From the IMG/VR virus record IMGVR_UViG_3300031857_000002, positions 1 through 64,000 of that record: a DNA stretch of 64,000 nt; one strand, written 5' to 3'. Below are positions 42 through 61,983 of the stretch, in pieces (position 1 is the first letter of the stretch; every line of letters begins with the position of its first letter). The notes beneath the pieces were generated by a model. The model was given only the letters and a program-made list of their open reading frames with translations. It had not been told where the DNA came from and made no database searches. The position numbers and the translations under genes were made by a program.

Positions 42-320
42 TTAAGTGTAATATACAATTTCACCAGTGGTGGGATTGTAAGCCAATTGAAAAAATCCTG
101 CAGGAAGTCCTGAACTACCGCCGTTACCAATACCGGCAGCAATCTGTGTTAGTGCGCCAGAGCTGTTGCCTATGTACACCTGATCAGTAGTTTGATCAAC
201 TACTAGTTCGCCAGGTCTAGCATTGCCGTTGTAATTGGCCAATGTTACTTGTGCGTTGTCTTTCATTACAGCACGGCTAATACCTGTAATGTTGTCGTAT
301 GGTGGGGGCGGATTGGCCAT
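42..320 (-). CDS. small virion/fibre-associated protein (hypothetical)
   Basis: 92-aa ORF whose start overlaps the upstream stop; 'ARPGELVVDQTTDQVYIGN' resembles the GE(L/I)..D.....(Y)IG N-terminal module of phage fibre proteins. Confidence 0.5.
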   Translation of the reverse strand: MANPPPPYDNITGISRAVMKDNAQVTLANYNGNARPGELVVDQTTDQVYIGNSSGALTQIAAGIGNGGSSGLPAGFFQLAYNPTTGEIVYYT

Positions 321-703
321 TATTTGTATCCTTTAAACCCTTTGACTGGGCTTTGTGTGCCTACAAATTCAGGCTCTTCACTGGCTGCTGTGCTCACTGG
401 CTTTTTGCCGCCAGGTGTCTTGGTCATTTTTAATGCGGCATCAATCACAGGGTCAACGTTGTTGTTGAATCCCACAATCACAGCATGTTCGCCAAATGCA
501 GTTTCTGCAGACCAAGCGGGTCGAAATTCATTTGCAGTGTCCGTTGCTTGGTCGCTTCTGGCACGAGCCATGGCCACACCAAATCGATAATTTTTATAAG
601 GATCCGATGCACTTAGCCCTGGAAGAACAAATGTATTCTTCATGGGTTCTTTAGTTTCTTCAGGCAAGTCAGCCTGCTCGGTGATAAACTCACGTGCTCG
701 CAT
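320..703 (-). CDS. putative internal head protein, paralog of 703..1068
   Basis: N-terminus MRAREFITE resembles the T4 capsid-targeting sequence (MKTYQEFIAE); shares N- and C-terminal motifs (SPxxGFKGY) with its neighbour. Confidence 0.55.
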   Translation of the reverse strand: MRAREFITEQADLPEETKEPMKNTFVLPGLSASDPYKNYRFGVAMARARSDQATDTANEFRPAWSAETAFGEHAVIVGFNNNVDPVIDAALKMTKTPGGKKPVSTAASEEPEFVGTQSPVKGFKGYK

Positions 704-1068
704 CAGTAGCCCTTGAACCCTTGCATGGGGCTGGTAGTGTTCACTGCTGGGTGTTCTTCTGAGTCTAAGTCACCGTGATTTAAATCTATATGACTTGCAC
801 CTGCGGCTTTGAAAGCCTGCTTGAGCATTTGTTGTTCGATTTCAGTATAGGGAAATGCCGCACGTTTTTTGCCTATCCAACTTTTGCTGTCCATTTTGAT
901 AGGTGCATCGCTTCCGTCGGCCATGGCCACAGCCATCATCACACGATTAAGAGTATAATCACTGCTGGTGCGTTCTGCATCACTAAACAAATTAAGGCCC
1001 ACAGTAGCAACTTGTCTACGTTTGCCTATTTTGCCATCTTGTTCTGTGATAAACTCTTGTGCTCTCAT
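703..1068 (-). CDS. putative internal head protein, paralog of 320..703
   Basis: N-terminus MRAQEFITE; C-terminus SPMQGFKGY; coupled start/stop overlaps. Confidence 0.55.
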   Translation of the reverse strand: MRAQEFITEQDGKIGKRRQVATVGLNLFSDAERTSSDYTLNRVMMAVAMADGSDAPIKMDSKSWIGKKRAAFPYTEIEQQMLKQAFKAAGASHIDLNHGDLDSEEHPAVNTTSPMQGFKGY

Positions 1069-1355
1069 TAGCTACCTGCGCCAATCACTCCTGCGGTAGC
1101 AGAACTTGCTGTGCCCAGTTCTAGTGCTGTCCAGTTTGAACCTGTGATAGTAACTTTATTGCCTGCGCCTGAATATGTTTCATAAACTGTGTTGGCAGGA
1201 ATGTTAATAGCCGCAGAGTACAAGTTGCCAACAGCGTTGGCTGTGCCCAGGGCCACAGCATACACTTGACATGTGACTGCTGTGTTTCCTGTGGAAATTT
1301 GCAATTTGTCTGTGTAAACTGTTGCGTTTGAAAGACTTGTATAAACGTTAGCCAT
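1068..1355 (-). CDS. small beta-rich hypothetical (possible virion protein)
   Basis: 95-aa Thr/Ala/Asn-rich ORF in a coupled late operon. Confidence 0.55.
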   Translation of the reverse strand: MANVYTSLSNATVYTDKLQISTGNTAVTCQVYAVALGTANAVGNLYSAAINIPANTVYETYSGAGNKVTITGSNWTALELGTASSATAGVIGAGS

Positions 1356-1525
1356 TATTTGGCATCCTTGTTGGGTTGCGACACCACTGGTTGGAACAGC
1401 TCACGAGTTTGATACATCACACCTGGGATTTCCACGGGTGTTTGTCGTCCAGTTTGTGGCGCAGGTGCATGCGGGTTCATGACCGGCACGGTAGTCAACA
1501 CAGATTCTTTTAGAATTTTGCTCAT
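1355..1525 (-). CDS. small hypothetical protein (MSKILKES...)
   Basis: ATG at 1525 lies just after the stop of the upstream gene; the longer ORF-track start overlaps that gene. Confidence 0.5.
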   Translation of the reverse strand: MSKILKESVLTTVPVMNPHAPAPQTGRQTPVEIPGVMYQTRELFQPVVSQPNKDAK

Positions 1526-1529
1526 AATA

Positions 1530-3563
1530 TTAATCCTGATATTTTTTCCATAAAGCACGAGTGCTGGCCAAGATGCCTTCGTCGATGTCTTTTTTCTTGA
1601 TAGCATTGGTTCCAGGAATTTTGTCACCAACTTTAACATTGTCGTCTTCTAGACCTTTGGTAAACAAGTTACCTTCGGCGGTTTTTTCTTCATCAACTTC
1701 TTTTTTCTTAACACCGGCCATTTCCATCATGCGGTGTAGTGCATCTTCTTCTGCTTCGGCATAGCTGTGTTGACGATCATCTTGACTGGCCAACACAGGT
1801 ACTGTGCTTTGACCTGTTGACTTAGGGCCATCTAATCCACCGCTGTACTGCATTGAACTACCTGTTTCTGTGTTGGTAGGATAGTCAGGTTCATTCATTG
1901 ACACTTCGTCAATTTCTTGTTCGCCACATGAGCAGTCAGGAGTACCACATCCGCATGCTGACTTATAGCCTGACCCGCCGTAGCCTTCGCTATCGCCACC
2001 GCCTAGGCCTGCTGACTTCAACAATGTTGCCAACTTCAGTGCATCTTCATCACTGGCAGTAATAGTTAGGCTCTTGCCGCCTTCTGTGGAGTCGCTCATG
2101 TTGATACTCATCGACTCATCAAGTTGACTCATTGATTCTGTAATAGCGTTTTCAAGATCGCGATTCAATGAATCATAAATGCCTTGGCCGTAACTGAATC
2201 CACTTGACGCTGTGGGTGTACCAGAGCCGCCTGCTTCTTCAGTCTTTTCTTTCTTCTTGGACTTTTTCTCGTCGTACTCAATGTCCTTGGCCACTTTCTT
2301 GCCGGCTTTTTCTGCTTTGTCATCTTCAGCACCACGCTTGCTGCCATGAATGCCATCTTTTTTCTTTTCGTCGTACTCAATGTCTTTGGCTACTTTCTTG
2401 CCGGCTTTTTCAGCATGATCGTCACGAGTAGTTGTGCTTTCTTCATCAACAGATTTACTAACTTTGTAGCCGGCTTTCTTCAACAGCGCCATGGCTGCTT
2501 TTAGATCACCAGAGTCATTGTTGGTTGGATCAGTATCGCCTTCTTTCATTTTGTTTCTAACACTTACTTTGCCTGGCTCATTTTTTGGCTTGTTGCCAAT
2601 CATGAATCCTTGCAGTGCTTTGCCTGAGTCAGATACTGAACCAGCAGATCCTTTTTTCTCACGCTCACCTTTGTGCTTGATTGCTTTGCTGGTCACACGT
2701 TCTGTACCCTTGGCAGGCCCCTTTGGACGACCACGGCTGCGTTTCTCTTGTGCGTTGCCTTCGTCATCAGTCTCGGATCCAACTGAAATACCTTGGTCAT
2801 CTGTGCGGCGGGTGACTTTACGACCTGTTGCTGTGTGCTTGATATCATGTTTGGAACCGTGTTCTACATCTCCCACACGTGGTTTGTCAGCACGTGGCTT
2901 CTTGTAGTTTGTGAACGGGTTGTTATCGTCTTCTTCGGCTGTTTTTTGTTTGCCACCTTTGCGTAACATAGCAAAGTCATTGGCATCTAATTTGCCATTG
3001 TCGTTTTTATCCAGTGTCTTTTGGCGGCCACTCAGTGCCGATTTCATGGCTTCGGCAGCAACGTCGCCTAGCATTTCGTCAACTTCTTTTTTAGCGCCAG
3101 CAATCTTGTCAGCAAAAGTAATCTTGTCTTTTGGTGGTGCCAAGGCAGCAAAACTCTTGGCCTTGGCAGGATTCATTTTTTCTTTGATAGGACTTTGTTG
3201 ACCCAAGCGTTGTTGAGCACGTTTCAATCCTTCAGGACTAGTAGGGCTCTGTGTGCGCTCTTTGTCTAGGTCTTGTAAAGTCATTCTGTTGCCAGGACGA
3301 TTCACAGCAGGGATCTGACTCTTGTCTGGACCGCCTTGGTAAGCACCTTCGTCTACTTCATTGTCATACTTGTCGTATTTTTTACGAACAGGATCCAATG
3401 CTTTGCCTTCACGACCGGCCTTGGCCAAGGCTTCCATACCTTGTTTGCCGTATTTCTCGTAACCCTTGGCAGCACGACTCATGTCACGCTCATTGAGTTG
3501 TTTGGATTCTGGTGCGTCGTTGACAGCAGCCAGGCGTTTGTTTAAGTCATAGAAAAATGTCAT
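1530..3563 (-). CDS. highly charged putative internal head (poly)protein
   Basis: 677 aa, K/E/D/G-rich; many (L/I/V/M)xE sites; AT-hook-like RGRP, EF-hand-like DKNDNGKLDANDF, internal repeat AEKAGKKVAKDIEYDEKK. Confidence 0.6.
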   Translation of the reverse strand: MTFFYDLNKRLAAVNDAPESKQLNERDMSRAAKGYEKYGKQGMEALAKAGREGKALDPVRKKYDKYDNEVDEGAYQGGPDKSQIPAVNRPGNRMTLQDLDKERTQSPTSPEGLKRAQQRLGQQSPIKEKMNPAKAKSFAALAPPKDKITFADKIAGAKKEVDEMLGDVAAEAMKSALSGRQKTLDKNDNGKLDANDFAMLRKGGKQKTAEEDDNNPFTNYKKPRADKPRVGDVEHGSKHDIKHTATGRKVTRRTDDQGISVGSETDDEGNAQEKRSRGRPKGPAKGTERVTSKAIKHKGEREKKGSAGSVSDSGKALQGFMIGNKPKNEPGKVSVRNKMKEGDTDPTNNDSGDLKAAMALLKKAGYKVSKSVDEESTTTRDDHAEKAGKKVAKDIEYDEKKKDGIHGSKRGAEDDKAEKAGKKVAKDIEYDEKKSKKKEKTEEAGGSGTPTASSGFSYGQGIYDSLNRDLENAITESMSQLDESMSINMSDSTEGGKSLTITASDEDALKLATLLKSAGLGGGDSEGYGGSGYKSACGCGTPDCSCGEQEIDEVSMNEPDYPTNTETGSSMQYSGGLDGPKSTGQSTVPVLASQDDRQHSYAEAEEDALHRMMEMAGVKKKEVDEEKTAEGNLFTKGLEDDNVKVGDKIPGTNAIKKKDIDEGILASTRALWKKYQD

Positions 3564-3567
3564 TGTA

Positions 3568-4176
3568 TTATCCTCTTGGTTTGGCGCCAGTTGCTGGCTT
3601 GGGTTGTCTCTTGATGTTGGTCATTGGGCTGGTTGTGCCCATTGGCAAATCATTAGAAGTTTTAGCAGGAGGAGTTTTGCCGCCGGCTACTGTGAAATTT
3701 GAACGATAGGCATTCTTCAACACCACATGGTTGTATGGGTCTGCAGAATAATCTTTCTTGAGATCCTTTTGCATTTTGTCATCTGCTGGATAGTCAGGAT
3801 CGTCTAATAGATCTTTGTTTTGATCTGTAATCTTTACTGACTCTACGTCAAGACTTTCTTCGTAAGGTGTGGTCATCATCACAATACGATTTTCGTCTAG
3901 TCCCAATAATCTAGCAATTTGTTTAATCTGTGGTTCAATAGCAGGGTACTTGAACTCTACATCAACTCTTGTGACAGATTGATTGGGGAAAGCAGGAAAG
4001 TCAGGAATCACAGCACGTACAGGTGTACTCTTGGGAGTTGACATTTTGACAACGTCAAATTGATCCATTTTTTCTTCAAATGATTTGAAGAAGCCTGGGG
4101 GAATATCACCTACCACTTTGATGCGGTATTGATATGTACGTTCACTTTCTGCGAGATATTTTGCAAATGGTTTCAT
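3568..4176 (-). CDS. conserved hypothetical late protein with capsid-targeting-like N-terminus
   Basis: MKPFAKYLAE start; AGGA RBS; late promoter at 4194-4199. Confidence 0.6.
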   Translation of the reverse strand: MKPFAKYLAESERTYQYRIKVVGDIPPGFFKSFEEKMDQFDVVKMSTPKSTPVRAVIPDFPAFPNQSVTRVDVEFKYPAIEPQIKQIARLLGLDENRIVMMTTPYEESLDVESVKITDQNKDLLDDPDYPADDKMQKDLKKDYSADPYNHVVLKNAYRSNFTVAGGKTPPAKTSNDLPMGTTSPMTNIKRQPKPATGAKPRG

Positions 4177-4700: not shown

Positions 4701-5132
4701 TCAGTTACGACCATTGGCAAACATATCGTTTTCGGTGATCACTCTAAACGCTAGCCCTTGGCGGGCACACCACTTCTGGGCGGCTGCCCATTTGGCATAG
4801 TTAACAGCCACTACAGCACGGTCGCGACTGCTCATTTTGCTTTCAATCACGCTTTGCTTTTTGGGTTTGATTTCAATTAGTTCTGCTTTGACTGTGTTGT
4901 TCTTTTGGCGATAGGTAATAAGAAAGTCAGGCACATAGTTGCTTTTTTTGCCTGTCACAGGATTCATGTAGGGAATGGCAATACTTTCGCTGGCCCACTG
5001 TAGCACATTATCGTTGGTATCGCAAAAACGCATGAAGCTGTGTTCCCATCCTGAGCGATATCTAGGTACACCTTTGCCCACATATTTTGCAGGGTTCAAC
5101 ACCACGTACTGACCTTGTGCCCAGCGACTCAT
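4701..5132 (-). CDS. head completion nuclease (T4 gp4-like, TnsA-type PD-(D/E)xK fold)
   Basis: Motifs YRSGWE..FM..CD, W.SE.I.IPY, YVPDF, IEIKP, N.AKW.AA. Confidence 0.9.
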   Translation of the reverse strand: MSRWAQGQYVVLNPAKYVGKGVPRYRSGWEHSFMRFCDTNDNVLQWASESIAIPYMNPVTGKKSNYVPDFLITYRQKNNTVKAELIEIKPKKQSVIESKMSSRDRAVVAVNYAKWAAAQKWCARQGLAFRVITENDMFANGRN

Positions 5133-26025: not shown

Positions 26026-29000
26026 TTATCCTAATGCTATCGATAATGCTATTGCATCGTTAATCGTCGCTGCCAGGGCACCGTTGATATTTATGACCCC
26101 AGATACTGACACATTTCCTGCTGTGACATTACCTGTGGCGCTGACCAAACCTGTTGTGCGTAAATTGCCTGCTTGTACGTTGCCAGTTACGCTGGCCAAT
26201 CCTGCAGTGTTAACATTCCCAGCTGTGATGTTGCCAGTAACAACAGCAAGACCGCCTGTGGTCAAATTGCCACCTGACACGTTGGCAGTTGAGTTAATAT
26301 TGCCAGTTGCAGTAACTACACCGCTTGTGATTAAGTTACCACCTGTGATGTTGCCTGTGGCAACCACAGTAGTTGGTACTACCAGTGCGTTGATGTTACC
26401 TGTGCTGGTAATGTTCAAGTTAGCACCGTTGACATTGCCTGTTGCTACCACATTGCCTGTAGTGGTAACTATTGCGGCTGTGATATTGCCAGTTACATTC
26501 AATGCACTTACAACGTTACCACTTAGACTCAATCCTGCGGCGTTTAGGTTGCCACCTGTTACATTACCTGCGGCGCTGATCAATCCTGCTGTGTTTATGT
26601 TGGAACCAGACACATTGCCTGCAGACAATATAAATCCACCAGTTGCTATATTAAGACCAGAAATATTTCCAGTAGCATCAATATATCCTGAAGCGTTTAC
26701 ATTAACTGAGCTAACATCACCTGTGGCGCTGATTGCACCTGATGAGTTAATATTGCCACCAGCAATATTGGCTGCGCTTGTGATGGTTCCTGTGGTTGAC
26801 AGTGCACCTGTAGAACTAATATTACCGCCAGCAATATTGGCTGCACTTGTGATGTTACCTGTTGCACTCATTGAACCAGTTGCTGTAATGTTTCCACCGT
26901 TGGCTGTGCTGATTGGACCGCCAACTGTGAACGCATTTCCAACTTTGTTAAATACCAATCCTGCGGATCCTGCTGTGGCTCCTGAATCGTTAAAAACAAC
27001 CTGTGTGTTAGAACTAGACAGTACCAAGTTACCAATCACGTTGTTGGCATATACGTTACCAACTGCGCTGACATTGCCCAAAGCATTGACATTGCCACCT
27101 GTTACATTACCAGTTGCTACAATTAATCCACTGGTAGTTAAGTTGCCTCCAACCACATTGGCTGTAGTTGTAATATTGCCTGATGCAAGCACAAATCCAG
27201 CAGTTCCAAAATTGGCACCTGATATATTGCCTGTGGCATCTACTCGCCCACCTGTGATCAAATTGCCAGCAGTAAGGTCTGCGGTGATCACAGTGTTACC
27301 AGTAACATCTAGCGTTCCGCCTGCAACAATATTACCACTGGCACTGAAGTTTACAGAGTTAACATTACCAGCTGAAACATTAGCACTGGATACAATGTTG
27401 CCTGTGGCAACTACTCTGCCACCTGTGACCAAGTTTCCACCGGCTACGTTGGCAGTAGATACAATATTGCCAGTTGAAGTAACAATACCACCTGTGGTAA
27501 TATTGCCACCAGTGACATTGGCAGTAGATACAATATTGCCAGTTGAGGTAACAACACCACCTGTGGTAATGTTGCCTCCAGTTATGTTGGCAGTAGATAC
27601 AATATTGCCAGTTGCACTGACAATTACTGTATTAACGTTACCACTATCAACGTTTCCAACTACGCTAAGACTTGTTAAAGTACCAACTCCTGTAGCTATC
27701 ACTCCTGTTAACTGCGATCCGTTGCCTAGGAAGAACCCACCAGCAATGTTGGCTGTGGTTGTGATATTGGCTGTGGTATTGATTGCACTTACAACGTTAC
27801 CACTCAGGCTCAACCCTGTAGCATTTACGTTACCACCAATGATGTTACCGGTTGCGCTCACAACGACTGTGTTTACATTTCCGCCAACAATGTTGCCAGT
27901 TGCACTTACAATGCCAGCATTAACGTTGCCGCCTGAAATATTACCTGTAACACCTAAGCTGCCTAGTGTGCCAACTGCTGTAATATTGGTTTGACTAGCT
28001 GTGATCAACGTACCAGCAATGCTGACACCTTCTAAGTTACCACCAGTAATGTTACCAAATGCGCTGATCAATCCCAGAGTGGTAATATTACCGCCTGTAA
28101 CATTGCCTGCAGAAACTATATTGCCTTGTGCGCTGACTAATCCAGCGGTATTAATGTTGCCGCCAGTTACGTTTCCAACTGCACTAGCAGCGCCAGCTGA
28201 GTTAACTGTGCCTGCTGTAACTGTTCCTGTTACGTTTAGCGCACTCACAACGTTGCCACTTAGGCTCAATCCTGCGGCATTTAAATTGCCACCATTGACG
28301 TTGGCAGTAGCGTTGATATTGCCAGTTGCAGTAATCACACCGCCTGTAATAATATTGCCGGCGCTGACATTGCCTGTGGCCACGACATTACCTGTTGTGC
28401 TGACAACGGCTGTGTTAACGTTACCACCATTGATGTTACCAGTTGCACTTACTGTGCCGGCTGTGGTCAGGTTGCCACCTGTGACATTGCCTGTGGCAAT
28501 TACAACACCTGTTGACGACACAGTAGATCCAGCATTGACATTGGCTCCACTAACATTGCCAGAGAATATAGCTGTGGTGCCAAGTATGTTGCCACCTGAT
28601 ATGTTGGCAGATGACGTGATGTTGCCAGTTGCTTGAACATAACCACCTGTAAACAAGTTGCCACCAGTGATGTTGCCCACAGCATTGACTGTGGCAGACA
28701 CGTCAATGTCTGCGGCATCTAGACCACCAACTTGGAATGTACCGTATGATCCAATTGTGACAACATCGTTGGCAATTGTGACATCCACAGCCGCAAACAG
28801 GTTGCCTGTTGAGTTGTCCAGGCCAATAAATGCCTGACGTTCTGTGGTGTTGAAATACCATAAATCTACACCACGATCTTTGCCATCGTTGGCGGCCAGC
28901 GGAGTGTTGTTTGGTCCACGACCAAGTCCAATGATTGGGTCTTCAACTTCCAGTGTGGCAACATTAACATAGGTCACGTTGCCGTTGATTGTTAAGTCTC

Positions 29001-32000
29001 CACCAATTACTGCATTACCAGAAGTTACCAATGTGGCTGCTTCTACGCCTGTTGCGGTAATGATGTTTCCGGCAGCTGATACCAATCCAGCTGTGGTCAA
29101 GTTACCTGTTACTGTGTTACCAGTAACACTCAAACTAGGCAGGGTGCCAATGCTGGTAGCAACTACACCAGTTAACTGGCTACCGTTACCAACAAAGTAA
29201 GGAGCAGTTACATTGGCGCTGACATTCAGCGGAGAAACAATATTACCTGTTAAGCTGGCTCCTGTGGCCAACAAGTAACTGGCTGTTACATTACCGGTTG
29301 CGCTGAAGATATCACCAAACACGTTGCCGGTTGTGCTGATCAATCCTGTTCCAACTACTCCTGTGGTGATCACATTGCCGCCACGAATATTACCTGTAGT
29401 TGTGATGTTGGCTGTAGAGTTAATTGCACTAACAACGTTGCCACTTAGACTCAATCCCGCGGCATTTACATTACCACCAACCACATTGCCTGTTGTTGAA
29501 ACCAAACCGCTGGTGTTGATATTGCCACCAGTGATGTTACCAATGGTGTTTACACCGCCTGTGGAACTCAATACACCTGCAGTATTGACATTTCCTGCAA
29601 TCACATTGCCTGTAGCACTGAGTGTTACACCAGCAATTACGTTGGCGCCACTAATGTTGCCTAGTGATCCAGATGTTGTGATGTTGCCAGCAGTGATATT
29701 AGCACTGGTTGTGATGTTGGCTGTGGTATTGATTGCGCTAACAACGTTGCCACTCAGGCTCAATCCTGCGGCATTTAGGTTGCCGCCAGTGATGTTACCA
29801 GTTACTGAAACTGTGGTACCCGTATGTGTTGTAGCATTAACGTTGGCTCCACCCAATATGTTGCCACCGGTGATATTACCAGTTACTGAAACTGTGGTAC
29901 CCGTATGTGTTGTAGCATTAACGTTGGCTCCACCCAATATGTTGCCACCAGTGATGTTGCCAGATGTGGATATTGGATTATTTGCAAAAGCAGCCAAATT
30001 GGCTGCCACGTTAGCATTGCCGTATGTTGCTGCCAGGCCTGTTAGTTGTGATCCGTTACCAATAAAGAATCCGCCAGCAATGTTAGCAGTGGTTGTGATA
30101 TTGCCACTTACGCTTGCGACACCTGTCACGCCTAATCCAGTTGACGAGAATGTACCAACTGTTGTGCCTGCTACACCAACTGTGGCATTACCGTTTAGTG
30201 CTACTGCAACATTTGATGTTCCATTAGTAATTGAAGAGCCAGCAGCCACTGTAATACCAGTTAGTTGACTACCATTACCAATAAAGTAATTGCCTGCAAT
30301 GTTGGCTGTGGTTGTAATGTTACCCGATGCTGTTACCAGTCCACCTGTGGTTAAATTTGCACCAGTAACATTGGCAGTTGTTATGATATTTGCAGAATTT
30401 GTGCCAGAAGCTAGATATGTTGAAACATCTGCATTGCTGTATCCTGCAGGTAACCCAGTTAGCTGGCTACCGTTACCTAAAATGTATCCACCTGAGATGT
30501 TAGCTGTGGTTGTGATGTTGGCTGCTGATACTAATGCACCTACCACGTTGCCACTCAAACTCAATCCTGCGGCATTGATGTTACCACCAGTAATATTACC
30601 AGTTGCAGAAATTAATCCAGCAGTACGTAAATTGCCACCATCAATGTTGGCGGTTACATTAACTGTGGTACCAGTGTGTGTTGTGGCATTGACATTAGCG
30701 CCACCAAGTATATTGCCGCCACTGATATTTGCAGTTGTTGTGATATTACCAGTTGAGCTAATTGGGTTAGAGCCAAATGCTGCCAAGTTGGCTGCCACGT
30801 TGGCATTGCCATATGTCGCTGGCAAGCCAGTTAGTTGGCTACCGTTACCTAATATAAAGTTACCGCTGATGTTGGCAGTGGTTGTGATATTGGCAGTGGT
30901 GTTGATTGCACTTACAACGTTACCACTTAGGCTCAATCCTGTGGCATTGACGTTGCCACCACCGATATTACCTGTAACTGCTAATGATCCAAGTGTGCCA
31001 ACTGAAGTAATGTTTGTTTGAGAAGCTGTTGCCAATGTACCAACAATGTTAGTACCACTCAAGTTGCCGCCTGTAATGTTGCCGGTAGCACTAATTAAGC
31101 CAGCTGTGTTGATGTTACCACCAGTTACGTTACCGCTTGCACTGACAGTTGCACCTGCAACTGCGCTGGTAACTGAAATATTACCGGCTGCAATATTACC
31201 AACTGTGTTTACGTTACCTGCATTTACGTTGCCTTGAGCACTAACGTTTCCAAGCACTGCAAGTACATTGGAATCTTTGTTATAGGTTAATCCGCCAACT
31301 GCATCTGCATTGCCATTGGTGTTGAAGAGAATTTGTGTGTTAGCGCCAGGTACAACAATGTTACCTGTAACATTACCAGCAAAGTTACCAACAAAGTAAC
31401 CAGCAGTAGTAATATTGCCAGTTGCTGATACTTGACCTTGTGTGGTCAAGTTGCCGCCAGCGACGTTGCCTGTAGCAGTAACAGATGCTGGACTAAATGC
31501 ACCAGACAAACTTAAATTGCCACCTGCAATGTTGGCGGTGGTAACAATGTTGGCTGTAGAATTAAGTGGGCTTAGGACATTGCCACTCAGACTCAATCCT
31601 ACAGCATTTACATTGGCAGCAGTGACATTGCCAGACGCACTTACTCTTATTGCAGTAACATTAGCAGCCGCACTCAAGTCTACTGCACTAACGCTGGAAA
31701 ATCCATCAAGACTTGGTGCGGGGCTTGCAAATACGGCTGTAATCTTTGAATTTGGAGGCAGTATAATACTACCAGGTACGGTCAAATTACCAACAGTGTC
31801 AAAGGTCCAGGAATTAGCACCAGCAGTGAGAGTCAAGTTTCCAGTGTCAACAATGTTGCCAGTTATGTTAAGATTACCAGTGTTGATGTTACCTGTACCG
31901 CTAACTACCCCAGAACCAAACAATAAGTTACCACCAGTGATGTTGCCAATTGCACTAACGTTACCAGATGCACTTACTGTACCGCCGGTTATTAAATTAC

Positions 32001-33153
32001 CACCAGTAACGTTACCAGTTGCAACAATCAATCCACCTGTAAGGACGTTGCCACCTGTGATACTAGCAGTTGCGCTGATCAACCCGGCTGTGGTAATGTT
32101 ACCGCCTGCGATGTTGCCAGTTGTGATAATGTTAGCTGTGTCTGTTCCAGAAGCTAGGTAGTTTGCAACATCAGCGTTGCCATAACTTGAAGCAACACCT
32201 GTTAAGAAAGCACCGTTACCTAAAATGTAAGTACCGCTGACGTTAGCACCACTGGTGATGTTGCCACTAGCACTGATTACGCCTGTTACATATTCACCTG
32301 TCGTGGCAAATGTAGCAACATTTGTACCAGCCACACCCACAGTAACGTTGCCTGAAGCGGCTGCTACCACATTGGATGTGCCGTTGACAATTGAACTTGG
32401 GGTTCCGCCGCCGCCAGATATGCCAGTCAGCAACGAACCGTTACCAATAAAGAAGTTGCCGCTGATGTTGGCTGTGGTGGTTACGTTACCTTGTAGTGCT
32501 GCCAAGTTGCCTGTATATGTGGGCAAGTATGTGGCCACATTGGCATTGCTGTAGTTTGCTGTGATGCCCGATAATTGGCTACCATTACCAAGAAAGAATC
32601 CTGCTGTGACATTGCCTGTGGTCAATATAGGATTTGAACCAAATGCCGCCAAGTTGGCTGCCACATTGGCGTTGCCATAAGAAGTAAGTGTGCCAGATCC
32701 AGTGATAACTGTTTGTTGACCCGACTCGTTGGTCATTACAACTGATGTGGCGTTGGCACTGATTGTGGCGTTGCCTAAGAAAATAGTACTGTTAGCCAAG
32801 TACAGATCATTAAACGCATTGGTTGGGCTACCAAGATTTTTGCTGACATTGCCTGCGGGCAACAAGTTGCCAGAAATTGTCAGGTCAGTACTGGAAAATA
32901 CTGCTACATTACCCACACCTGCAACACCTACTGTTACATTGGCTCCTGCTCCGCCAATGCTGACATTAGATGAACCATTGGTAATTGCGGCACCACCGGA
33001 TGCCACAATGCCAGTAAGAGCAGCACCATTACCAATAAAGTAGTTGCCAGCTACGTTGCCTGTGGCGGTAACATTCCCGGCTGTAACTAAATTAGCACCT
33101 TGTATATTACCAGATGCGCTAATGCCCGTTGTTCCGTCTAGTTGAATTGCCAT
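26026..33153 (-). CDS. very long GN-repeat fibre/adhesin-like virion protein
   Basis: 2375 aa of (S/A/T)GN(I/V)xGGN(I/L/V) repeats; 'VEDPIIGL...DRG' module; late promoter at 33176-33181. Confidence 0.75.
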   Translation of the reverse strand: MAIQLDGTTGISASGNIQGANLVTAGNVTATGNVAGNYFIGNGAALTGIVASGGAAITNGSSNVSIGGAGANVTVGVAGVGNVAVFSSTDLTISGNLLPAGNVSKNLGSPTNAFNDLYLANSTIFLGNATISANATSVVMTNESGQQTVITGSGTLTSYGNANVAANLAAFGSNPILTTGNVTAGFFLGNGSQLSGITANYSNANVATYLPTYTGNLAALQGNVTTTANISGNFFIGNGSLLTGISGGGGTPSSIVNGTSNVVAAASGNVTVGVAGTNVATFATTGEYVTGVISASGNITSGANVSGTYILGNGAFLTGVASSYGNADVANYLASGTDTANIITTGNIAGGNITTAGLISATASITGGNVLTGGLIVATGNVTGGNLITGGTVSASGNVSAIGNITGGNLLFGSGVVSGTGNINTGNLNITGNIVDTGNLTLTAGANSWTFDTVGNLTVPGSIILPPNSKITAVFASPAPSLDGFSSVSAVDLSAAANVTAIRVSASGNVTAANVNAVGLSLSGNVLSPLNSTANIVTTANIAGGNLSLSGAFSPASVTATGNVAGGNLTTQGQVSATGNITTAGYFVGNFAGNVTGNIVVPGANTQILFNTNGNADAVGGLTYNKDSNVLAVLGNVSAQGNVNAGNVNTVGNIAAGNISVTSAVAGATVSASGNVTGGNINTAGLISATGNITGGNLSGTNIVGTLATASQTNITSVGTLGSLAVTGNIGGGNVNATGLSLSGNVVSAINTTANITTTANISGNFILGNGSQLTGLPATYGNANVAANLAAFGSNPISSTGNITTTANISGGNILGGANVNATTHTGTTVNVTANIDGGNLRTAGLISATGNITGGNINAAGLSLSGNVVGALVSAANITTTANISGGYILGNGSQLTGLPAGYSNADVSTYLASGTNSANIITTANVTGANLTTGGLVTASGNITTTANIAGNYFIGNGSQLTGITVAAGSSITNGTSNVAVALNGNATVGVAGTTVGTFSSTGLGVTGVASVSGNITTTANIAGGFFIGNGSQLTGLAATYGNANVAANLAAFANNPISTSGNITGGNILGGANVNATTHTGTTVSVTGNITGGNILGGANVNATTHTGTTVSVTGNITGGNLNAAGLSLSGNVVSAINTTANITTSANITAGNITTSGSLGNISGANVIAGVTLSATGNVIAGNVNTAGVLSSTGGVNTIGNITGGNINTSGLVSTTGNVVGGNVNAAGLSLSGNVVSAINSTANITTTGNIRGGNVITTGVVGTGLISTTGNVFGDIFSATGNVTASYLLATGASLTGNIVSPLNVSANVTAPYFVGNGSQLTGVVATSIGTLPSLSVTGNTVTGNLTTAGLVSAAGNIITATGVEAATLVTSGNAVIGGDLTINGNVTYVNVATLEVEDPIIGLGRGPNNTPLAANDGKDRGVDLWYFNTTERQAFIGLDNSTGNLFAAVDVTIANDVVTIGSYGTFQVGGLDAADIDVSATVNAVGNITGGNLFTGGYVQATGNITSSANISGGNILGTTAIFSGNVSGANVNAGSTVSSTGVVIATGNVTGGNLTTAGTVSATGNINGGNVNTAVVSTTGNVVATGNVSAGNIITGGVITATGNINATANVNGGNLNAAGLSLSGNVVSALNVTGTVTAGTVNSAGAASAVGNVTGGNINTAGLVSAQGNIVSAGNVTGGNITTLGLISAFGNITGGNLEGVSIAGTLITASQTNITAVGTLGSLGVTGNISGGNVNAGIVSATGNIVGGNVNTVVVSATGNIIGGNVNATGLSLSGNVVSAINTTANITTTANIAGGFFLGNGSQLTGVIATGVGTLTSLSVVGNVDSGNVNTVIVSATGNIVSTANITGGNITTGGVVTSTGNIVSTANVTGGNITTGGIVTSTGNIVSTANVAGGNLVTGGRVVATGNIVSSANVSAGNVNSVNFSASGNIVAGGTLDVTGNTVITADLTAGNLITGGRVDATGNISGANFGTAGFVLASGNITTTANVVGGNLTTSGLIVATGNVTGGNVNALGNVSAVGNVYANNVIGNLVLSSSNTQVVFNDSGATAGSAGLVFNKVGNAFTVGGPISTANGGNITATGSMSATGNITSAANIAGGNISSTGALSTTGTITSAANIAGGNINSSGAISATGDVSSVNVNASGYIDATGNISGLNIATGGFILSAGNVSGSNINTAGLISAAGNVTGGNLNAAGLSLSGNVVSALNVTGNITAAIVTTTGNVVATGNVNGANLNITSTGNINALVVPTTVVATGNITGGNLITSGVVTATGNINSTANVSGGNLTTGGLAVVTGNITAGNVNTAGLASVTGNVQAGNLRTTGLVSATGNVTAGNVSVSGVININGALAATINDAIALSIALG
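27454..27616. repeat. ~69-bp (23-aa) tandem repeat in the fibre gene
   Basis: GTAGATACAATATTGCCAGTTG recurs three times at ~69-nt spacing. Confidence 0.8.
29789..29950. repeat. near-perfect 81-bp (27-aa) tandem duplication in the fibre gene
   Basis: GTTACTGAAACTGTGGTACCCGTATGTGTTGTAGCATTAACGTTGGCTCCACCCAATATGTTGCCACC occurs at 29801 and 29882. Confidence 0.9.
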
Positions 33154-42001: not shown

Positions 42002-43096
42002 TTACAGTCCAGCCAGACGCTTGAGGTCGATCACATTGCTGCGATCTTCTTGATCAACGTTTTGGGTAGGAACAGTCTTATCACCGGTAACTGAGGAAAC
42101 ATTTTCTGTGATCACTTTAGAAGCTTTCACAGAGCGGTCTTCCAACACTGCTGGTAGATACTTTTCAAAAGCATTTTTCAAACGTGAAGTTTGGACGCTT
42201 TCGAGCAAATTACGCATGACATCGCGCTTTTCCTTGTTCAAGGGAGAAAGCAACATTTCCATCGTGCTGTCACGCTCGTTGGATTCTTTGATCATACGCA
42301 GTTCGCGTTCTTTACTCTCCACAACGACTTTCGCCTTTTGTGTGAGTTTGATGGCTTCCGCCAATTGCTGGTCCTTGCGGGACAATGCAGAGTATAACTT
42401 GCGTACTTCGGCTTTCTCATTCAAGTGAGTAGCACCAAATTCGCTTGCATACGCTTCAAAGATACGACGACCAAAATTGTTCTCACGAGCAACTTTAATG
42501 TCTTCTTGCAATTGTGTAAGTTCAGCCTTCAAGTGACGGCTAACAGCTTGACTCATTTTGTCTGCACTTTCTTTTACGAAACGTGCTTTTAATCCTTCGA
42601 GCTTGGAACGAGCTTCACGAACGAGGCGGACTTTTGTTTCCACTACGTCACGTTTGTCTGCAGCAAACTCTTGGATCTCACGAGCCAACGCATGCACCAT
42701 GAAGTTTTCTAGCTTGGCTAGACCTTCGGTGTGCATTTTACGATCTTTACGCAATTCGCCAATTTCTTCTGCAAGTTTACTAACCAAGAAGCCGTTAAAC
42801 TTCGTTGCTGATTCGTTCATCTTGCGTTGGAAACGGACGCGATCTTCAGCCAATGCTTGCTTTTCAGCAGCCACGGCTTGAATCTCTGCGGCGAGACCTT
42901 CTGTTACCATTTTGTCAAGGGCTTCCACCATTACTGACTTGTCGTGCTCGTAGCGTTGTGCAAACTCTTCTCTGAGTTCTACACGAGCCTGTTCACGAGC
43001 TTCATTTAGCTTGGTTTCCCAAGCTTCATTAATCTCCATGCGAGTTTCCTCGGTGATCAGGTCACTATCTAGCAATGGTTTGATAGCATCTAACAT
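42002..43096 (-). CDS. prohead core scaffolding protein (gp22-like)
   Basis: Coiled-coil E/K/A-rich protein between protease and capsid genes; AGGAG RBS. Confidence 0.8.
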   Translation of the reverse strand: MLDAIKPLLDSDLITEETRMEINEAWETKLNEAREQARVELREEFAQRYEHDKSVMVEALDKMVTEGLAAEIQAVAAEKQALAEDRVRFQRKMNESATKFNGFLVSKLAEEIGELRKDRKMHTEGLAKLENFMVHALAREIQEFAADKRDVVETKVRLVREARSKLEGLKARFVKESADKMSQAVSRHLKAELTQLQEDIKVARENNFGRRIFEAYASEFGATHLNEKAEVRKLYSALSRKDQQLAEAIKLTQKAKVVVESKERELRMIKESNERDSTMEMLLSPLNKEKRDVMRNLLESVQTSRLKNAFEKYLPAVLEDRSVKASKVITENVSSVTGDKTVPTQNVDQEDRSNVIDLKRLAGL

Positions 43097-43108: not shown

Positions 43109-43741
43109 TTATATTTTGAGATCTCTGATGAGCTTTTTGACTTCATCTTTGAGATATCTCTGCACTTTGTTGTTATGCCCAGATTCGCGAGCCACTTCAA
43201 GCAATCTATGTCCGTACTTCATGTTCATGAGTCCTTCGTAAATTGCTTTAGGATAAGCATTCGGAGCACTGGGTTGTGCAACCACATCTATAGTGACAAT
43301 TTCAAAGTCACTTACATGTCCTGTTCTGTCATCAACGTTGCCGCTTCCACGGCTTGATACACCTAGTCTAACACCAGATTGTAGCAACGTCTTGATCAAT
43401 TCTCCCATTGGAGTTGGCAAAATTTTAAGTTTGCCACATCCTGCGTCTCCATCCATCCACATGCCTTCAACGCTGTGGCACACACGATCCAAGTTAATCT
43501 TCAAATCATCTGGGTGATCCACTTCACCTAAAACGGAGTTACCTTCTTTAATCTGTTGATTAATAGTATTAACTGCCTTAGATATCTCGTGTAAAGGATA
43601 GACACGTTCATTTGCATTGCGCTTGTTGCCTTCAATACAAATGCCTTTAAGATAGAGATTCTTACCTCCGCTGATATCAGCTTCCTCCAACACCTGGATG
43701 TTGGCCTGATTAAAGGTAAGTTGTTCTCTTAGCGTTTTCAT
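43109..43741 (-). CDS. prohead protease (gp21-like)
   Basis: N.N.R.Y, LGE.DHP, GVSSRG.G, D.V..PSAP.A. Confidence 0.95.
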   Translation of the reverse strand: MKTLREQLTFNQANIQVLEEADISGGKNLYLKGICIEGNKRNANERVYPLHEISKAVNTINQQIKEGNSVLGEVDHPDDLKINLDRVCHSVEGMWMDGDAGCGKLKILPTPMGELIKTLLQSGVRLGVSSRGSGNVDDRTGHVSDFEIVTIDVVAQPSAPNAYPKAIYEGLMNMKYGHRLLEVARESGHNNKVQRYLKDEVKKLIRDLKI

Positions 43742-43747
43742 TGCCGA

Positions 43748-44590
43748 TTAGCCTCTAGCTACTGGAGACTTTGTGTTAACACCTGATGCTTGGCCCAAAT
43801 GAGGCTTAGTAGCAGGCTTTTGATCTTTCATGCTGGCACCAGCTTTGTTCTGGAAGTCGCCAATGAGATCTTTTGTGTTGTTGCTGTAAGCAGAAGTGTC
43901 GTGCTTGCCACCCATTTCGCCACCAGCGTGTACAGGCTTAACTGTGTTGCCAACAGGACCTTTAGCGCCTGCATTGGCTGCAACTGGGCTCTTGGAATAA
44001 GCACCTTGCTCACCAGTTACTGGCTTTGGGGCTGCTTTTAAGCTCACGGCTTCCATCATGCCCATTTCTTCTGTGTCGTCCATTTCAAGAGCGTCACCGC
44101 CTTCATCAGGACCCATCATGTCGCCATTTCCGTCCATGTCACCCATGTCGTCGTTGCCGCCCATGAGGTCTTCAAACTCGGCCATTAACTGGTCTAGTTT
44201 GTCTTCTAAATTCATGATGTCGTCTTTGGTAGCTGGCTCATCGCTGTCGCCGCCGAACTCATCATTGTCCATTTCCATGTCTTTGGTAAGATCTTCGCCG
44301 TCTTCTTCTGCTTCGTCGTCAAACTCCGCATCGTCGCCTTCGGCTTCCATGTTCATGTCAGATTCTTCTTCCATTTCCACGTCGTCGATTAGATCATTAC
44401 TGGCGTCACCACCCATGTCCATCTCGTCTAATTCTTCGTCTGCGCCTTCTTCGATTTCTTCGGCTTCTTCAGCCATGATGTCTTCGTAGATCTGGCGGCT
44501 TTTTTCCACAACGATGTCGTGGAATAGTTCGCGAGCTTTTTGCTCGTCATCATTGATCACATATTCAATCAATTGTTCAAAACGGTTCAT
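43748..44590 (-). CDS. highly acidic prohead core protein (gp67/gp68-position)
   Basis: 280 aa, D/E/M-rich; between portal and protease; late promoter at 44622-44627. Confidence 0.6.
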   Translation of the reverse strand: MNRFEQLIEYVINDDEQKARELFHDIVVEKSRQIYEDIMAEEAEEIEEGADEELDEMDMGGDASNDLIDDVEMEEESDMNMEAEGDDAEFDDEAEEDGEDLTKDMEMDNDEFGGDSDEPATKDDIMNLEDKLDQLMAEFEDLMGGNDDMGDMDGNGDMMGPDEGGDALEMDDTEEMGMMEAVSLKAAPKPVTGEQGAYSKSPVAANAGAKGPVGNTVKPVHAGGEMGGKHDTSAYSNNTKDLIGDFQNKAGASMKDQKPATKPHLGQASGVNTKSPVARG

Positions 44591-50581: not shown

Positions 50582-50607
50582 CCGCTTCAGCAGAACAAGT
50601 TTCTGCT

Positions 50608-53938: not shown

Positions 53939-53978
53939 GTGTTGTATGCGATTTATCCTTGCTGTATAGTTATCTCCG

Positions 53979-59457: not shown

Positions 59458-59470
59458 AGAGTTTGATAAA

Positions 59471-61971: not shown

Positions 61972-61983
61972 CTATGTATTATA

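What the first reader, a model, noticed from the sequence alone, without database searches (positions are those of the whole stretch)
1530..3563. 677-aa apparent polyprotein of gp21-cleavable peptides carrying mini-motifs
Seen: about 15 hydrophobic-x-Glu sites punctuate the protein (QLNE, EVDE x3, PIKE, KMKE, SVDE, AITE, QLDE, EIDE, DIDE and others). The segments between them carry an EF-hand-like loop (DKNDNGKLDANDF, ~2975-3015), an AT-hook (KRSRGRPKGP, ~2715-2745), a duplicated AEKAGKKVAKDIEYDEKK (~2265-2415) and a CGCGTPDCSC cluster. Established: T4 gp21 cleaves after (L/I)xE in core and internal proteins. Inference: it is packaged into the head and cut into many small DNA- or metal-binding peptides that condense DNA or are injected into the host.
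Basis: partly seen in the sequence, partly recalled or inferred. Interest (0 to 1): 0.6.

Follow-up and report, generated by a model that had tools for sequence, protein, structure and literature searches.

The report
Likely protease-cut phage head-internal protein
A 677-residue, mostly disordered protein of an uncultured freshwater giant phage carries about eight conserved hydrophobic-x-Glu motifs of the type cut by the phage's own T4-type head protease, so it is probably a head-internal precursor cut into DNA-binding and acidic pieces, though neither cleavage nor packaging has been shown.

Summary

**What it is.** It founds a very large, unannotated family of uncultured viral proteins: 1440 clusters at 50% identity. 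It has no Pfam or PHROG family and no match in cultured phages. The host genome is a 320-kb freshwater jumbo myophage with a T4-type head module (Peptidase_S77 protease, Gp23-family capsid protein, gp20-type portal).

**For the cleavage idea.**
- In this one sequence the count of [LIVM]xE sites (13) is not beyond composition (P=0.06).
- Across the family, 8 of 13 conserved Glu columns have a conserved hydrophobic residue exactly two positions upstream (P=2.6e-5).
- The phage's scaffold and protease show the same signature; the sheath, tubes and other neighbours do not.
- Neighbouring small proteins start with T4-like capsid-targeting sequences (MRAxEF[ILVM]xE).
- The gene sits where PA5oct encodes gp281, a protein found in virions by mass spectrometry.

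**Against, or limiting it.**
- Insertion and deletion junctions do not coincide with the sites.
- Only about 8 sites are conserved, not 15.
- The EF-hand loop is optional in the family.

**Motifs.** The AT-hook and a four-Cys cluster are strongly conserved.

**Verdict.** A plausible processed head-internal precursor and a new variant of a known kind. Cleavage and packaging remain untested.

The parts
1530..3563 (-). ORF of 677 aa (P0001). The N-terminal half (26-341) is basic, net +21. The C-terminal half (342-662) is acidic, net -23.
3489..3563 (-). Residues 1-25: conserved N-terminal helix MTFFYDLNKxL, ending in the near-invariant LNE25|R. Candidate propeptide.
3348..3488 (-). Residues 26-72: confident helical-hairpin mini-module (pLDDT about 90) ending in VDE72|G. 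Some homologs carry a different module here.
3039..3179 (-). Residues 129-175: most conserved block, TFADKIAGAKKEVDE163|MLGDVAAEAMK. The site lies inside a predicted helix.
2973..3011 (-). Residues 185-197: EF-hand-like Ca loop inside a predicted helix-loop-helix. An optional module in the family.
2778..2873 (-). Residues 231-262: conserved small beta module, GxKHD..TATGRKVTRRxDxxGxSVG (pLDDT 86-89).
2715..2744 (-). Residues 274-283: AT-hook. The G278-R279-P280 core is kept in about 90% of representatives.
2442..2510 (-). Residues 352-374: helix LKAAMALLKKAGY followed by the conserved site VDE374|E/K at the start of a long disordered stretch.
2262..2414 (-). Residues 384-434: duplicated AEKAGKKVAKDIEYDEKK unit. 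The family has 0, 1, 2 or 4 copies; some homologs carry a DUF3008-like unit at this place instead (five of the 12 in A1), and 51 of 149 representatives carry such a unit.
2235..2243 (-). Residues 441-443: TEE here, VEE in most of the family. Conserved site closing the variable module.
2004..2201 (-). Residues 455-520: small alpha/beta module holding ITE476|S (P3 100%, P1 98%, P2 variable) and the ALKLATLLKSAGL helix.
1926..1955 (-). Residues 537-546: four-Cys cluster (family consensus CxxC-x4-CxC; C539, C544 and C546 kept in over 93%). Followed by IDE553|V at 1905-1913.
1794..1895 (-). Residues 557-590: conserved but predicted-disordered motif NEPDYPTNxE...YSGGLxGPKSTGQxT.PV.
1713..1754 (-). 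Residues 604-617: helix EEDALHRMME614|MAGV. Copies of the LxR[LM]xxLAG motif are also found at the C-termini of the scaffold and of other putative head proteins.
1533..1595 (-). Residues 657-677: C-terminal helix holding IDE662|G (P3 95%, P1 100%).
43109..43741 (-). Prohead protease of the T4 gp21 family, the presumed processing enzyme.
42002..43096 (-). Scaffold-position protein with 23 conserved hydrophobic-x-Glu sites, ending ...LKRLAGL. Positive control for the motif signature.
3568..4176 (-). Upstream 202-aa gene, homolog of the PA5oct virion protein gp282. It starts MKPFAKYLAE|S, which looks like a capsid-targeting sequence.
320..1068 (-). Two downstream paralogous small genes (703-1068 and 320-703) starting MRA[QR]EFITE|Q, also like a capsid-targeting sequence.

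Best explanation
P0001 is the precursor of a head-internal protein of a T4-core jumbo myophage. It is made late from the conserved structural cluster and, by inference, built into the prohead core. There the Peptidase_S77 (gp21-type) prohead protease would cut it after Glu at about eight conserved hydrophobic-x-Glu sites: 25, (72), 163, 374, 443, 476, 553, 614 and 662.

Cutting would remove a 25-residue N-terminal propeptide and separate a basic N-terminal part from acidic C-terminal pieces. The basic part (about residues 26-374, net charge about +20) carries the AT-hook, a beta module and an optional EF-hand loop. The acidic pieces (residues 375-662) carry the four-Cys cluster.

The basic fragments would stay bound to the packaged DNA and could leave with it. 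The acidic fragments would mostly be expelled, as T4 core fragments are.

Shown here: the gene, its conservation, its motif signature, its synteny and its disorder. Inferred: incorporation, cleavage and the fate of the fragments.
For: 1. **T4-type head module in the same genome.** Peptidase_S77 E=6e-23, Gp23-family capsid protein, Portal_T4.
2. **Family-level motif.** Among 149 representatives at 50% identity, 8 of 13 conserved Glu columns have conserved L/I/V/M/F at exactly -2. Offsets -5, -4, -3 and -1 give 1-2. Background is 11.7%, binomial P=2.6e-5. P2 is variable at sites 25, 374, 443, 476, 614 and 662. The P1 Glu residues are more conserved than other Glu (0.65 against 0.42, P=0.012).
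3. **Replication and controls.** An independent IMG/VR set gives 10 of 27, P=0.003. Sheath, both tubes, the gp4-like protein and the 162-aa and 202-aa neighbours give P=0.12-0.69. Scaffold gives 23 of 47 (P=0.001) and protease 9 of 14 (P=0.007).
4. **The lineage uses such sites.** Four conserved L/I-x-E sites lie in the first 42 capsid-protein residues; the Pfam Gp23 match begins only at residue 54. Neighbouring small proteins start MRAxEF[ILVM]xE or MKxFxxY[LI]xE, with hydrophobic and Glu fixed and the middle residue free. This matches the T4 capsid-targeting-sequence logic (PMC9026906; Alt ITE-6, PMC5694885).
5. **Synteny.** The order sheath, tubes, gp4-like, 162-aa gene, 202-aa gene, then this gene recurs in a 348-kb relative, and most of the 80 IMG/VR loci also carry homologs of these neighbours (202-aa gene in 77). 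In PA5oct the same slot holds gp282 and gp281, both annotated in the PA5oct record as detected by ESI-MS/MS (note field; products 'structural protein'). The 202-aa protein is homologous to gp282 (E=2e-11).
6. **Structure.** The AF2 model has 312 of 677 residues below pLDDT 50 and small confident modules. Low-confidence linkers start at 20, 70, 125, 370 and 622, just before sites 25, 72, 128, 374 and 625.
7. **Embedded mini-protein.** A full-length DUF3008 unit (model positions 1-57 of 57) occurs in homologs, and 51 of 149 representatives carry the KHKGLPEK-type motif; where seen in A1 it starts right after VDE374.
8. **Precedent.** T4 gp21 cuts gp22, gp67 and gp68 into multiple fragments.
Against: - No experimental datum exists for this protein or any homolog. 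No cultured phage has a sequence homolog, and similarity to PA5oct gp281 is not significant (BLASTP E=0.83, hhalign probability 0.7%).
- In the single sequence the site count is not above composition (P=0.06), and the gene ranks only 23rd in the genome by z-score.
- Insertion junctions are not enriched near the sites: 9% against a null of 13% within 5 aa, with no enrichment at either junction. No gene fission was seen in 76 loci.
- Five sites (163, 476, 483, 614, 662) lie inside predicted helices, where a protease may not reach them.
- P3 is often Val or Met, whereas the T4 rule is Leu/Ile.
- The N-terminus is not a 10-residue capsid-targeting sequence.
Confidence: 0.5

Rival explanations
1. 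It is a packaged internal or ejection protein that works as one long, mostly intact chain. At most the 25-residue N-terminal propeptide is removed. The conserved hydrophobic-x-Glu motifs are short linear binding motifs, for instance for the core, the capsid interior or DNA, rather than cut sites.
For: - The most conserved motifs lie inside long invariant blocks and predicted helices (163, 476, 614, 662).
- The LxR[LM]xxLAG motif around 614 recurs at the C-termini of the scaffold and of other putative head proteins, and in Rak2 ORF050, annotated a 'virion structural protein'. That suggests a binding motif.
- Indel junctions ignore the sites.
- It is always one ORF.
Against: - The enrichment is specific to offset -2, with a free middle residue and no helical periodicity at -3 or -4. 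That is what a protease motif predicts and not what an amphipathic helix predicts.
- The same signature marks the scaffold and protease, whose T4 counterparts gp22 and gp21 are substrates of this protease family.
Confidence: 0.25
2. It is a sacrificial core or scaffold-accessory protein, like T4 gp67 and gp68. It helps build or size the large prohead, is chopped up, and essentially all of it leaves before DNA enters, so nothing DNA-bound remains.
For: - T4 core proteins are cut into multiple fragments that mostly exit the head.
- The C-terminal half is acidic like T4 core proteins.
- It shares the RLAG-type motif with the scaffold.
Against: - The near-invariant AT-hook and the strongly basic 26-374 part argue for DNA contact.
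- PA5oct gp281, in the same genomic slot, is still detected in mature virions.
Confidence: 0.12
3. It is a non-virion DNA-handling accessory expressed with the packaging genes, for example a nucleoid or concatemer organiser acting with terminase. In a 348-kb relative and in PA5oct this slot lies upstream of the large-terminase gene; the 162-aa gene's likeness to a small terminase is my unconfirmed guess.
For: - Gene position next to the 162-aa gene, whose resemblance to T4 small terminase I recall from memory and no search supported; in the relative it lies upstream of TerL.
- AT-hook present.
Against: - The small-terminase identity of the 162-aa gene is not confirmed (no Pfam or PDB match).
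- PA5oct gp281 and gp282, in the same slot, are annotated as detected by ESI-MS/MS.
- The protease-motif signature would be left unexplained.
Confidence: 0.08
4. The motifs are compositional accidents of a Lys-, Asp- and Glu-rich disordered protein and mean nothing.
For: The single-sequence count is not significant.
Against: Family-level conservation and offset specificity. The AT-hook and Cys cluster are near-invariant.
Confidence: 0.03

Closest known systems
T4 prohead core proteins gp22, gp67 and gp68 (substrates of gp21, Peptidase S77)
   Same: - Encoded by a phage with a gp21-family protease.
- Multiple conserved hydrophobic-x-Glu motifs.
- Partly acidic and largely unstructured.
- The T4 proteins are cut into multiple fragments (PMC9026906, PMC5694885).
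   Different: - No sequence homology (no Pfam or PHROG hit).
- Much longer (677 aa).
- Encoded about 38 kb from the protease, scaffold and capsid genes, next to the tail and packaging genes.
- Bipolar, with a basic AT-hook half.
- P3 is often Val or Met.
T4 internal proteins IPI, IPII, IPIII and Alt, with their capsid-targeting sequence
   Same: - A basic, DNA-associated packaged protein with an N-terminal piece ending in hydrophobic-x-Glu.
- Neighbouring genes carry convincing look-alikes of the targeting sequence (MRAxEFIxE, MKPFAKYLAE).
   Different: - P0001's own N-terminus has its first site at residue 25, not 8-10.
- The T4 internal proteins are cut once, or twice in Alt, not about eight times.
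- No homology.
phiKZ, 201phi2-1 and SPN3US inner-body or ejection proteins cut by gp175-type proteases
   Same: Jumbo-phage head-internal proteins cut after Glu at several sites; some are DNA-associated.
   Different: - A different motif (S/A/G-x-E or A-x-E).
- A different phage lineage.
- No sequence similarity.
- The inner-body proteins of Rak2-like phages are unidentified (PMC7247149).
PA5oct gp281 and Rak2 ORF049-051 (annotated structural proteins; gp281 with an ESI-MS/MS note)
   Same: - The same genomic slot, after the homolog of the 202-aa gene.
- Acidic and low-complexity.
- They share LxR[LM]xxLAG-type motifs (Rak2 ORF050 LARMMELAGQ; PA5oct gp281 ILRLAGV).
   Different: No significant alignment (BLASTP E=0.83; hhalign probability 0.7%). 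They lack the AT-hook, the Cys cluster and the basic half.
Polyvalent proteins of phages and conjugative elements (Iyer and colleagues 2017, cited from memory)
   Same: Multi-module proteins thought to be packaged and delivered with the DNA.
   Different: Those are strings of enzymatic domains. Here the modules are 30-100-residue mini-motifs, and no enzymatic domain was detected.

Membership tests
Substrate of a T4 gp21-type (Peptidase_S77) prohead protease | A gp21-family protease is encoded by the same phage | tested here: met
   43109-43741(-): Peptidase_S77 E=6.1e-23; phrog_207 E=1.5e-57.
Substrate of a T4 gp21-type (Peptidase_S77) prohead protease | L/I-x-E motifs under selection | tested here: met
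   8 of 13 conserved Glu columns have a conserved hydrophobic residue at -2 (P=2.6e-5). Replicated at P=0.003, with negative controls on the neighbours. P3 includes V and M as well as L and I, as do this lineage's own targeting-sequence look-alikes.
Substrate of a T4 gp21-type (Peptidase_S77) prohead protease | Cleavage after Glu demonstrated (semi-tryptic peptides, N-terminal sequencing or an in vitro assay) | not testable with these tools
   No proteomic data for any family member. The PA5oct supplements are not held.
Substrate of a T4 gp21-type (Peptidase_S77) prohead protease | Presence in proheads or virions | not testable with these tools
   Indirect only: in PA5oct the protein in the same slot (gp281) and the homolog of the upstream 202-aa gene (gp282) carry an ESI-MS/MS note in the PA5oct record.
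T4 gp22, gp67 or gp68 homolog | Sequence or profile similarity to these families | tested here: not met
   No Pfam family at E<=0.01 (best: EF-hand_7 0.068, Cdc6_lid 0.083), and no PHROG, PDB-sequence or Foldseek match.
T4-type internal protein with a capsid-targeting sequence | A roughly 10-residue N-terminal sequence with a hydrophobic residue at 8 and Glu at 10 | tested here: not met
   The first site in P0001 is LNE at 23-25. The neighbours at 3568-4176, 703-1068 and 320-703 do fit.
EF-hand | A 12-residue Ca loop flanked by helices, with family-level conservation | tested here: inconclusive
Pfam EF-hand_7 reaches only E=0.068, below cut-off. The strict pattern occurs in 27 of 149 representatives, and natural variants replace the segment.
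AT-hook | R-G-R-P core flanked by basic residues, conserved | tested here: met
   KRSRGRPKG. G278, R279 and P280 are kept in 116, 108 and 112 of 124 aligned representatives. DNA binding itself was not tested.
DUF3008 (PF11450) | Match to the Pfam model | tested here: not met
   P0001 has no match. 4 of 12 and 3 of 10 scanned homologs match the full model at E of 2e-4 to 4e-3, below the gathering score.
phiKZ-type inner-body protein | Homology to the phiKZ inner-body proteins, or the S/A/G-x-E motif | tested here: not met
   No tblastn match in 50,697 phage records. [SAG]xE is not enriched: 15 against 15.5 expected.

The most novel reading that the evidence does not exclude
This family is a true polyprotein of a dsDNA phage. 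It would be the so far unidentified DNA-embedded internal or 'inner body' material of T4-core jumbo phages of the Rak2/PA5oct-related lineage. It would be built into the prohead as one chain and cut by the gp21-type protease into a set of mini-proteins that organise the 320-kb genome in the head and enter the host with it. Those mini-proteins would include an AT-hook peptide, a four-Cys metal knuckle, an optional EF-hand, DUF3008 or AEKAGKKV units, and acidic spacers. Module content would vary between strains.
Probability: 0.22. Interest if true: 0.75.

Novelty: new variant of a known kind. Interest (0 to 1): 0.55.

Why it matters
- Jumbo phages of the Rak2 group (phAPEC6, 121Q) have a radiation-sensitive inner body whose proteins are unknown (PMC7247149). 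This unannotated family has 1440 clusters at 50% identity. Near-identical copies of this gene occur in lake and other freshwater metagenomes, plus a few runs labelled fungus, subsurface or marine, across 14 studies. It gives a concrete, testable candidate class for head-internal, DNA-bound material in the T4-core jumbo lineage.
- It also gives a candidate rule for how that material is processed.
- If the multi-site cleavage is real, it would extend the T4 scheme of targeting sequence plus gp21 cleavage from single propeptide removal to polyprotein-style release of mini-proteins.
- It would also place DUF3008, a family of unknown function, inside a packaged and possibly processed phage protein, a first functional context for it.
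- If it is not real, the family is still a large, conserved, modular disordered virion-cluster protein with an invariant AT-hook and Cys knuckle.

Tried and rejected
**Searches that found nothing useful.**
- Pfam and PHROG scans of P0001: nothing significant.
- megablast and three tblastn searches (whole protein, 130-260, 440-677) against 50,697 phage records: no match.
- BLASTP and hhalign against PA5oct gp281, the protein in the same slot: not significant.
- PDB sequence profile search: one chance hit at E=0.69.
- Foldseek against the PDB with the AF2 model: nothing at E<=0.001.
- ESM Atlas features: only unnamed viral clusters, scores 0.85 or lower.
- PA5oct paper: no cleavage or coverage data in the text, and its supplements are not held.
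- Paralog search in the 320-kb genome: none; the hit to the acidic 280-aa protein is compositional.

**Tests of 'modules gained or lost at xxE boundaries'.**
- Insertion positions against conserved sites: 9% against a null of 13%.
- Site occurrence at the left and right junctions: equal to the null. Both are negative.
- An alignment-based listing shows a few coincident cases, for example the module after LNE|RD, but no general rule.
- Gene fission at the sites: none in 76 loci.

**Ideas dropped or left unconfirmed.**
- Small-terminase identity of the 162-aa neighbour: not confirmed by Pfam or PDB.

**Not run.**
- Complex prediction of protease with substrate. The contact is transient, the substrate is disordered and I had no diverse protease alignment, so a negative result would say nothing.

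**Housekeeping.**
- No alternative genetic code was used.
- Read laying was given 2,034 letters.
Full report
**1. The observation**

ORF 1530..3563 on the minus strand is open from ATG to stop and gives 677 aa, stored as P0001. I count 13 [LIVM]xE sites and 18 [LIVMAF]xE sites.

- EF-hand-like loop: residues 185-197, window 2973-3011.
- AT-hook: residues 274-283, window 2715-2744.
- Duplicated 18-mer: residues 384-401 and 417-434. At DNA level it is a 62-nt repeat, 85% identical, period 99 nt.
- Cys cluster: residues 537-546, window 1926-1955.

In the single sequence the site count is not beyond composition. Thirteen sites compare with 8.4 +/- 2.5 in shuffles (P=0.06). Strict [LI]xE gives P=0.31. 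By z-score the gene ranks 23rd in its genome, although it has the highest count (10) of [LIVM][DNT]E.

**2. The genome**

The window is the first 64 kb of a single 320,175-bp contig. The head module is T4-type:
- Peptidase_S77 protease at 43109-43741 (E=6e-23).
- Gp23-family capsid protein at 40783-41979.
- gp20-type portal at 44909-46687.

The capsid protein is 65% identical to those of PA5oct, Vibrio phage 2.275.O and other phages of the Rak2-related jumbo group.

Near-identical DNA occurs in lake and freshwater metagenomes from 14 studies, and contigs from RNA libraries also cover the gene. That does not prove transcription.

**3. The family**

P0001 has no Pfam family at E<=0.01 (best rows: EF-hand_7 E=0.068, Cdc6_lid E=0.083), no PHROG family and no match in 50,697 phage records. 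It is nonetheless the founder of a very large uncultured family:
- More than 3356 word-search hits, down to about 50% identity in the 120 listed.
- 1440 clusters at 50% identity with E<=1e-3, of which 335 have E<=1e-30.
- 383 loci in IMG/VR.

I used the large search because the word search and the family scans left the protein unannotated.

In every one of 76 loci the homolog is a single ORF of 565-903 aa. Synteny is fixed: sheath, tube, tube, a 119-aa gene, a gp4-like TnsA-fold protein, a 162-aa gene, a 202-aa gene, this gene, then small genes, then (in a 348-kb relative) the large terminase.

PA5oct has the same order, with gp282 and gp281 in the last two slots. Both carry an 'ESI-MS/MS' note in the PA5oct record and are annotated 'structural protein'. 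The 202-aa protein is homologous to gp282 (E=2e-11). P0001 and gp281 are not detectably homologous and share only LxxLAG-type motifs.

**4. Architecture**

AlphaFold2 with an 85-sequence alignment gives a mean pLDDT of 58, with 312 residues below 50. Small confident modules stand out:
- A helical hairpin at 28-62 (pLDDT about 90).
- A helix-loop-helix at 181-201, around the EF-hand loop.
- A beta module at 233-250.
- A helix at 352-363.
- An alpha/beta module at 463-517.
- Helices at 604-615 and 657-676.

Foldseek finds no solved relative.

The chain is bipolar. Residues 26-341 carry net +21 and residues 342-662 carry net -23.

The alignment of 12 diverse homologs (A1) shows whole modules inserted, lost or swapped:
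- A GKHNN...GSKAAGERVAGA module after LNE|RD.
- A DUF3008-like unit in place of the AEKAGKKV repeats. Pfam matches the full model (positions 1-57 of 57) at E of about 2e-4.
- Extra units ending in RMxEMAG.

Natural variants in the sequencing runs replace the EF-hand segment (2937-3043) and the repeat module (2267-2433).

**5. Are the sites meaningful?**

I aligned 149 representatives at 50% identity to a P0001-anchored profile.
- The P1 Glu of [LIVM]xE sites is more conserved than other Glu: 0.65 against 0.42, P=0.012.
- Conserved sites, by P1 position: 25 (LNE), 163 (VDE), 374 (VDE), 443 (VEE in the family, TEE here), 476 (I-x-E), 553, 614 (M-x-E) and 662. Site 72 is intermediate, with P3 hydrophobic in 73% and P1 Glu in 61%.
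- At 25, 374, 443, 476, 614 and 662 the middle residue varies freely while P3 and P1 are fixed.
- Of 13 conserved Glu columns, 8 have conserved L/I/V/M/F at exactly -2. Offsets -5, -4, -3 and -1 give 1-2. Background is 11.7%, P=2.6e-5.
- In an independent IMG/VR set the result holds: 10 of 27, P=0.003.
- The same test is negative for the sheath, both tubes, the gp4-like protein and the 162-aa and 202-aa neighbours (P=0.12-0.69).
- It is positive for the scaffold (23 of 47, P=0.001) and the protease (9 of 14, P=0.007). These are the classic gp21 substrates in T4.

The capsid protein has four conserved L/I-x-E sites in its first 42 residues, upstream of residue 54, where its Pfam Gp23 match begins.

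Five low-confidence linkers in the model begin 2-5 residues before sites 25, 72, 128, 374 and 625. A post-hoc estimate gives P of about 0.01.

**6. What argues against a cassette-like polyprotein**

- The 109 insertions of 15 aa or more in the representatives are not nearer to conserved sites than chance (9% against 13%). Their own junctions carry no excess of sites.
- No genome splits the gene.
- Five motifs lie in predicted helices, and the best conserved one, VDE163, sits in the middle of a 35-residue invariant block.

**7. The mini-motifs**

- The AT-hook core GRP is kept in about 90% of aligned representatives.
- The Cys cluster is a conserved CxxC-x4-CxC. C539, C544 and C546 are kept in over 93%. 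P0001 has the first Cys shifted by one position.
- The strict EF-hand pattern is present in 27 of 149.
- The AEKAGKKV unit occurs in 0, 1, 2 or 4 copies.
- A DUF3008-like unit is present in 51 of 149.

**8. Context that strengthens the head-internal reading**

Small neighbouring genes start with look-alikes of the T4 capsid-targeting sequence:
- MRA[QR]EFITE at 703-1068 and 320-703.
- MKPFAKYLAE at 3568-4176.
- More copies at genome positions 183749, 201771, 211696, 213153, 215019 and 311030.

Relatives keep F/Y, then a hydrophobic residue, then any residue, then Glu, with a free middle residue and P3 drawn from I, L, V or M.

In T4, the first 10 residues of IPIII target it to the core, and residues 8 and 10 govern processing. 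gp21 cuts after L/I-X-E, Alt is cut at ITE-6 and LTE-619, and gp22, gp67 and gp68 are cut into multiple fragments that mostly leave the head (PMC9026906; PMC5694885).

A second recurring motif, LxR[LM]xxLAG[LIV], ends the scaffold (..LKRLAGL). It also ends, or nearly ends, three proteins at 213-215 kb. It occurs in P0001 at 604-617, in Rak2 ORF050 (annotated 'virion structural protein') and at the N-terminus of PA5oct gp281. It may be a core-incorporation motif, but that is inference.

Rak2-like phages phAPEC6 and 121Q have an inner body whose proteins are unidentified (PMC7247149).

**9. Conclusion**

The most likely reading (about 0.5) is a head-internal precursor processed by the gp21-type protease at about eight conserved sites. 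This would separate a basic AT-hook-bearing part from acidic pieces.

The main rival (about 0.25) is the same packaged protein acting largely intact, with the motifs serving as binding elements.

The motif is real at family level and the context fits. The cassette picture, the count of 15 sites, and the claims of metal binding, DNA condensation and injection are not established.

It is a new variant of a known kind: protease-processed phage head-core or internal proteins.

Noticed in passing
window 320-703(-), 703-1068(-), 3568-4176(-); genome C1 183749-184360, 201771-202412, 211696-213153, 213153-213671, 215019-215456, 311030-311389 (all -): At least nine proteins start with a look-alike of the T4 capsid-targeting sequence: MRAxEFIxE, MKPFAKYLAE, MKFNDFIVSE, MKINHIIDE or MNIDQILKE. 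For the three genes in the window (320-703, 703-1068, 3568-4176), IMG/VR relatives keep F/Y, a hydrophobic residue, any residue, then Glu, while the middle residue varies. They are candidate packaged internal proteins.
   Followed up: partly
window 42002-43096(-) C-terminus; genome 213668-215008(-), 215019-215456(-), 213153-213671(-); P0001 residues 604-617; L002 (Rak2 ORF050); L001 (PA5oct gp281 N-terminus): A recurring motif, LxR[LM]xxLAG[LIV], ends the scaffold (..VIDLKRLAGL) and lies at or near the C-terminus of three proteins at 213-215 kb (the last residues of two of them). It also occurs in proteins annotated as structural (Rak2 ORF050, PA5oct gp281). It may be a core- or capsid-binding signal.
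   Followed up: partly
window 1355-1639(-): The listed 94-aa ORF overlaps the 3' end of P0001 by 110 nt. The likely true start is the internal ATG at 1525 (MSKILKES..., 56 aa), 5 nt after the P0001 stop. Some relatives share that N-terminus and the conserved LKE7.
   Followed up: partly
window 320-1068(-); L002 10391-10795 (Rak2 ORF051): The two MRAxEFITE paralogs end in ..SP[VM]xGFKGY(K). Rak2 virion protein ORF051 ends in ..SSRQGFTG. The 202-aa and acidic 280-aa proteins end in ..TSPM.. and ..KSPVARG. This is a possible shared C-terminal motif of unknown role.
   Followed up: no
window 43748-44590(-) and 44682-44900(-): A very acidic 280-aa protein and a 72-aa protein (MLLTEF...) lie between the protease and the portal. 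In T4, as I recall the gene order (not checked here), genes 67 and 68 sit between portal and protease. Neither has a Pfam or PHROG match.
   Followed up: partly
window 4701-5132(-): A 143-aa protein with a TnsA-like endonuclease N-terminal fold (PF08722, E=8.5e-23). It lies in the slot annotated as gp4 head completion or head closure in Rak2 and PA5oct.
   Followed up: partly
window 2937-3043 and 2267-2433: Contigs from freshwater RNA-library runs carry variants in which the EF-hand segment is replaced by 36 other letters and the AEKAGKKV repeat module by 78 other letters. This is population-level module exchange inside the gene.
   Followed up: partly
window 26026-33153(-); genome 76833-91160(+): Two giant ORFs of 2375 aa and 4775 aa. 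Not examined.
   Followed up: no
window about 50000-62000: G+C falls to 0.38-0.43, against about 0.45-0.48 elsewhere in the window. Not examined.
   Followed up: no
window 46707-49697(-): A 996-aa protein just upstream of the portal, with Gly/Ala-rich hydrophobic stretches. Its C-terminal region contains ..SSHTTGRAMDF.., which by eye and from memory recalls a cell-wall peptidase motif; no domain search was run on it. It could be a tape-measure or an ejected lytic protein.
   Followed up: no
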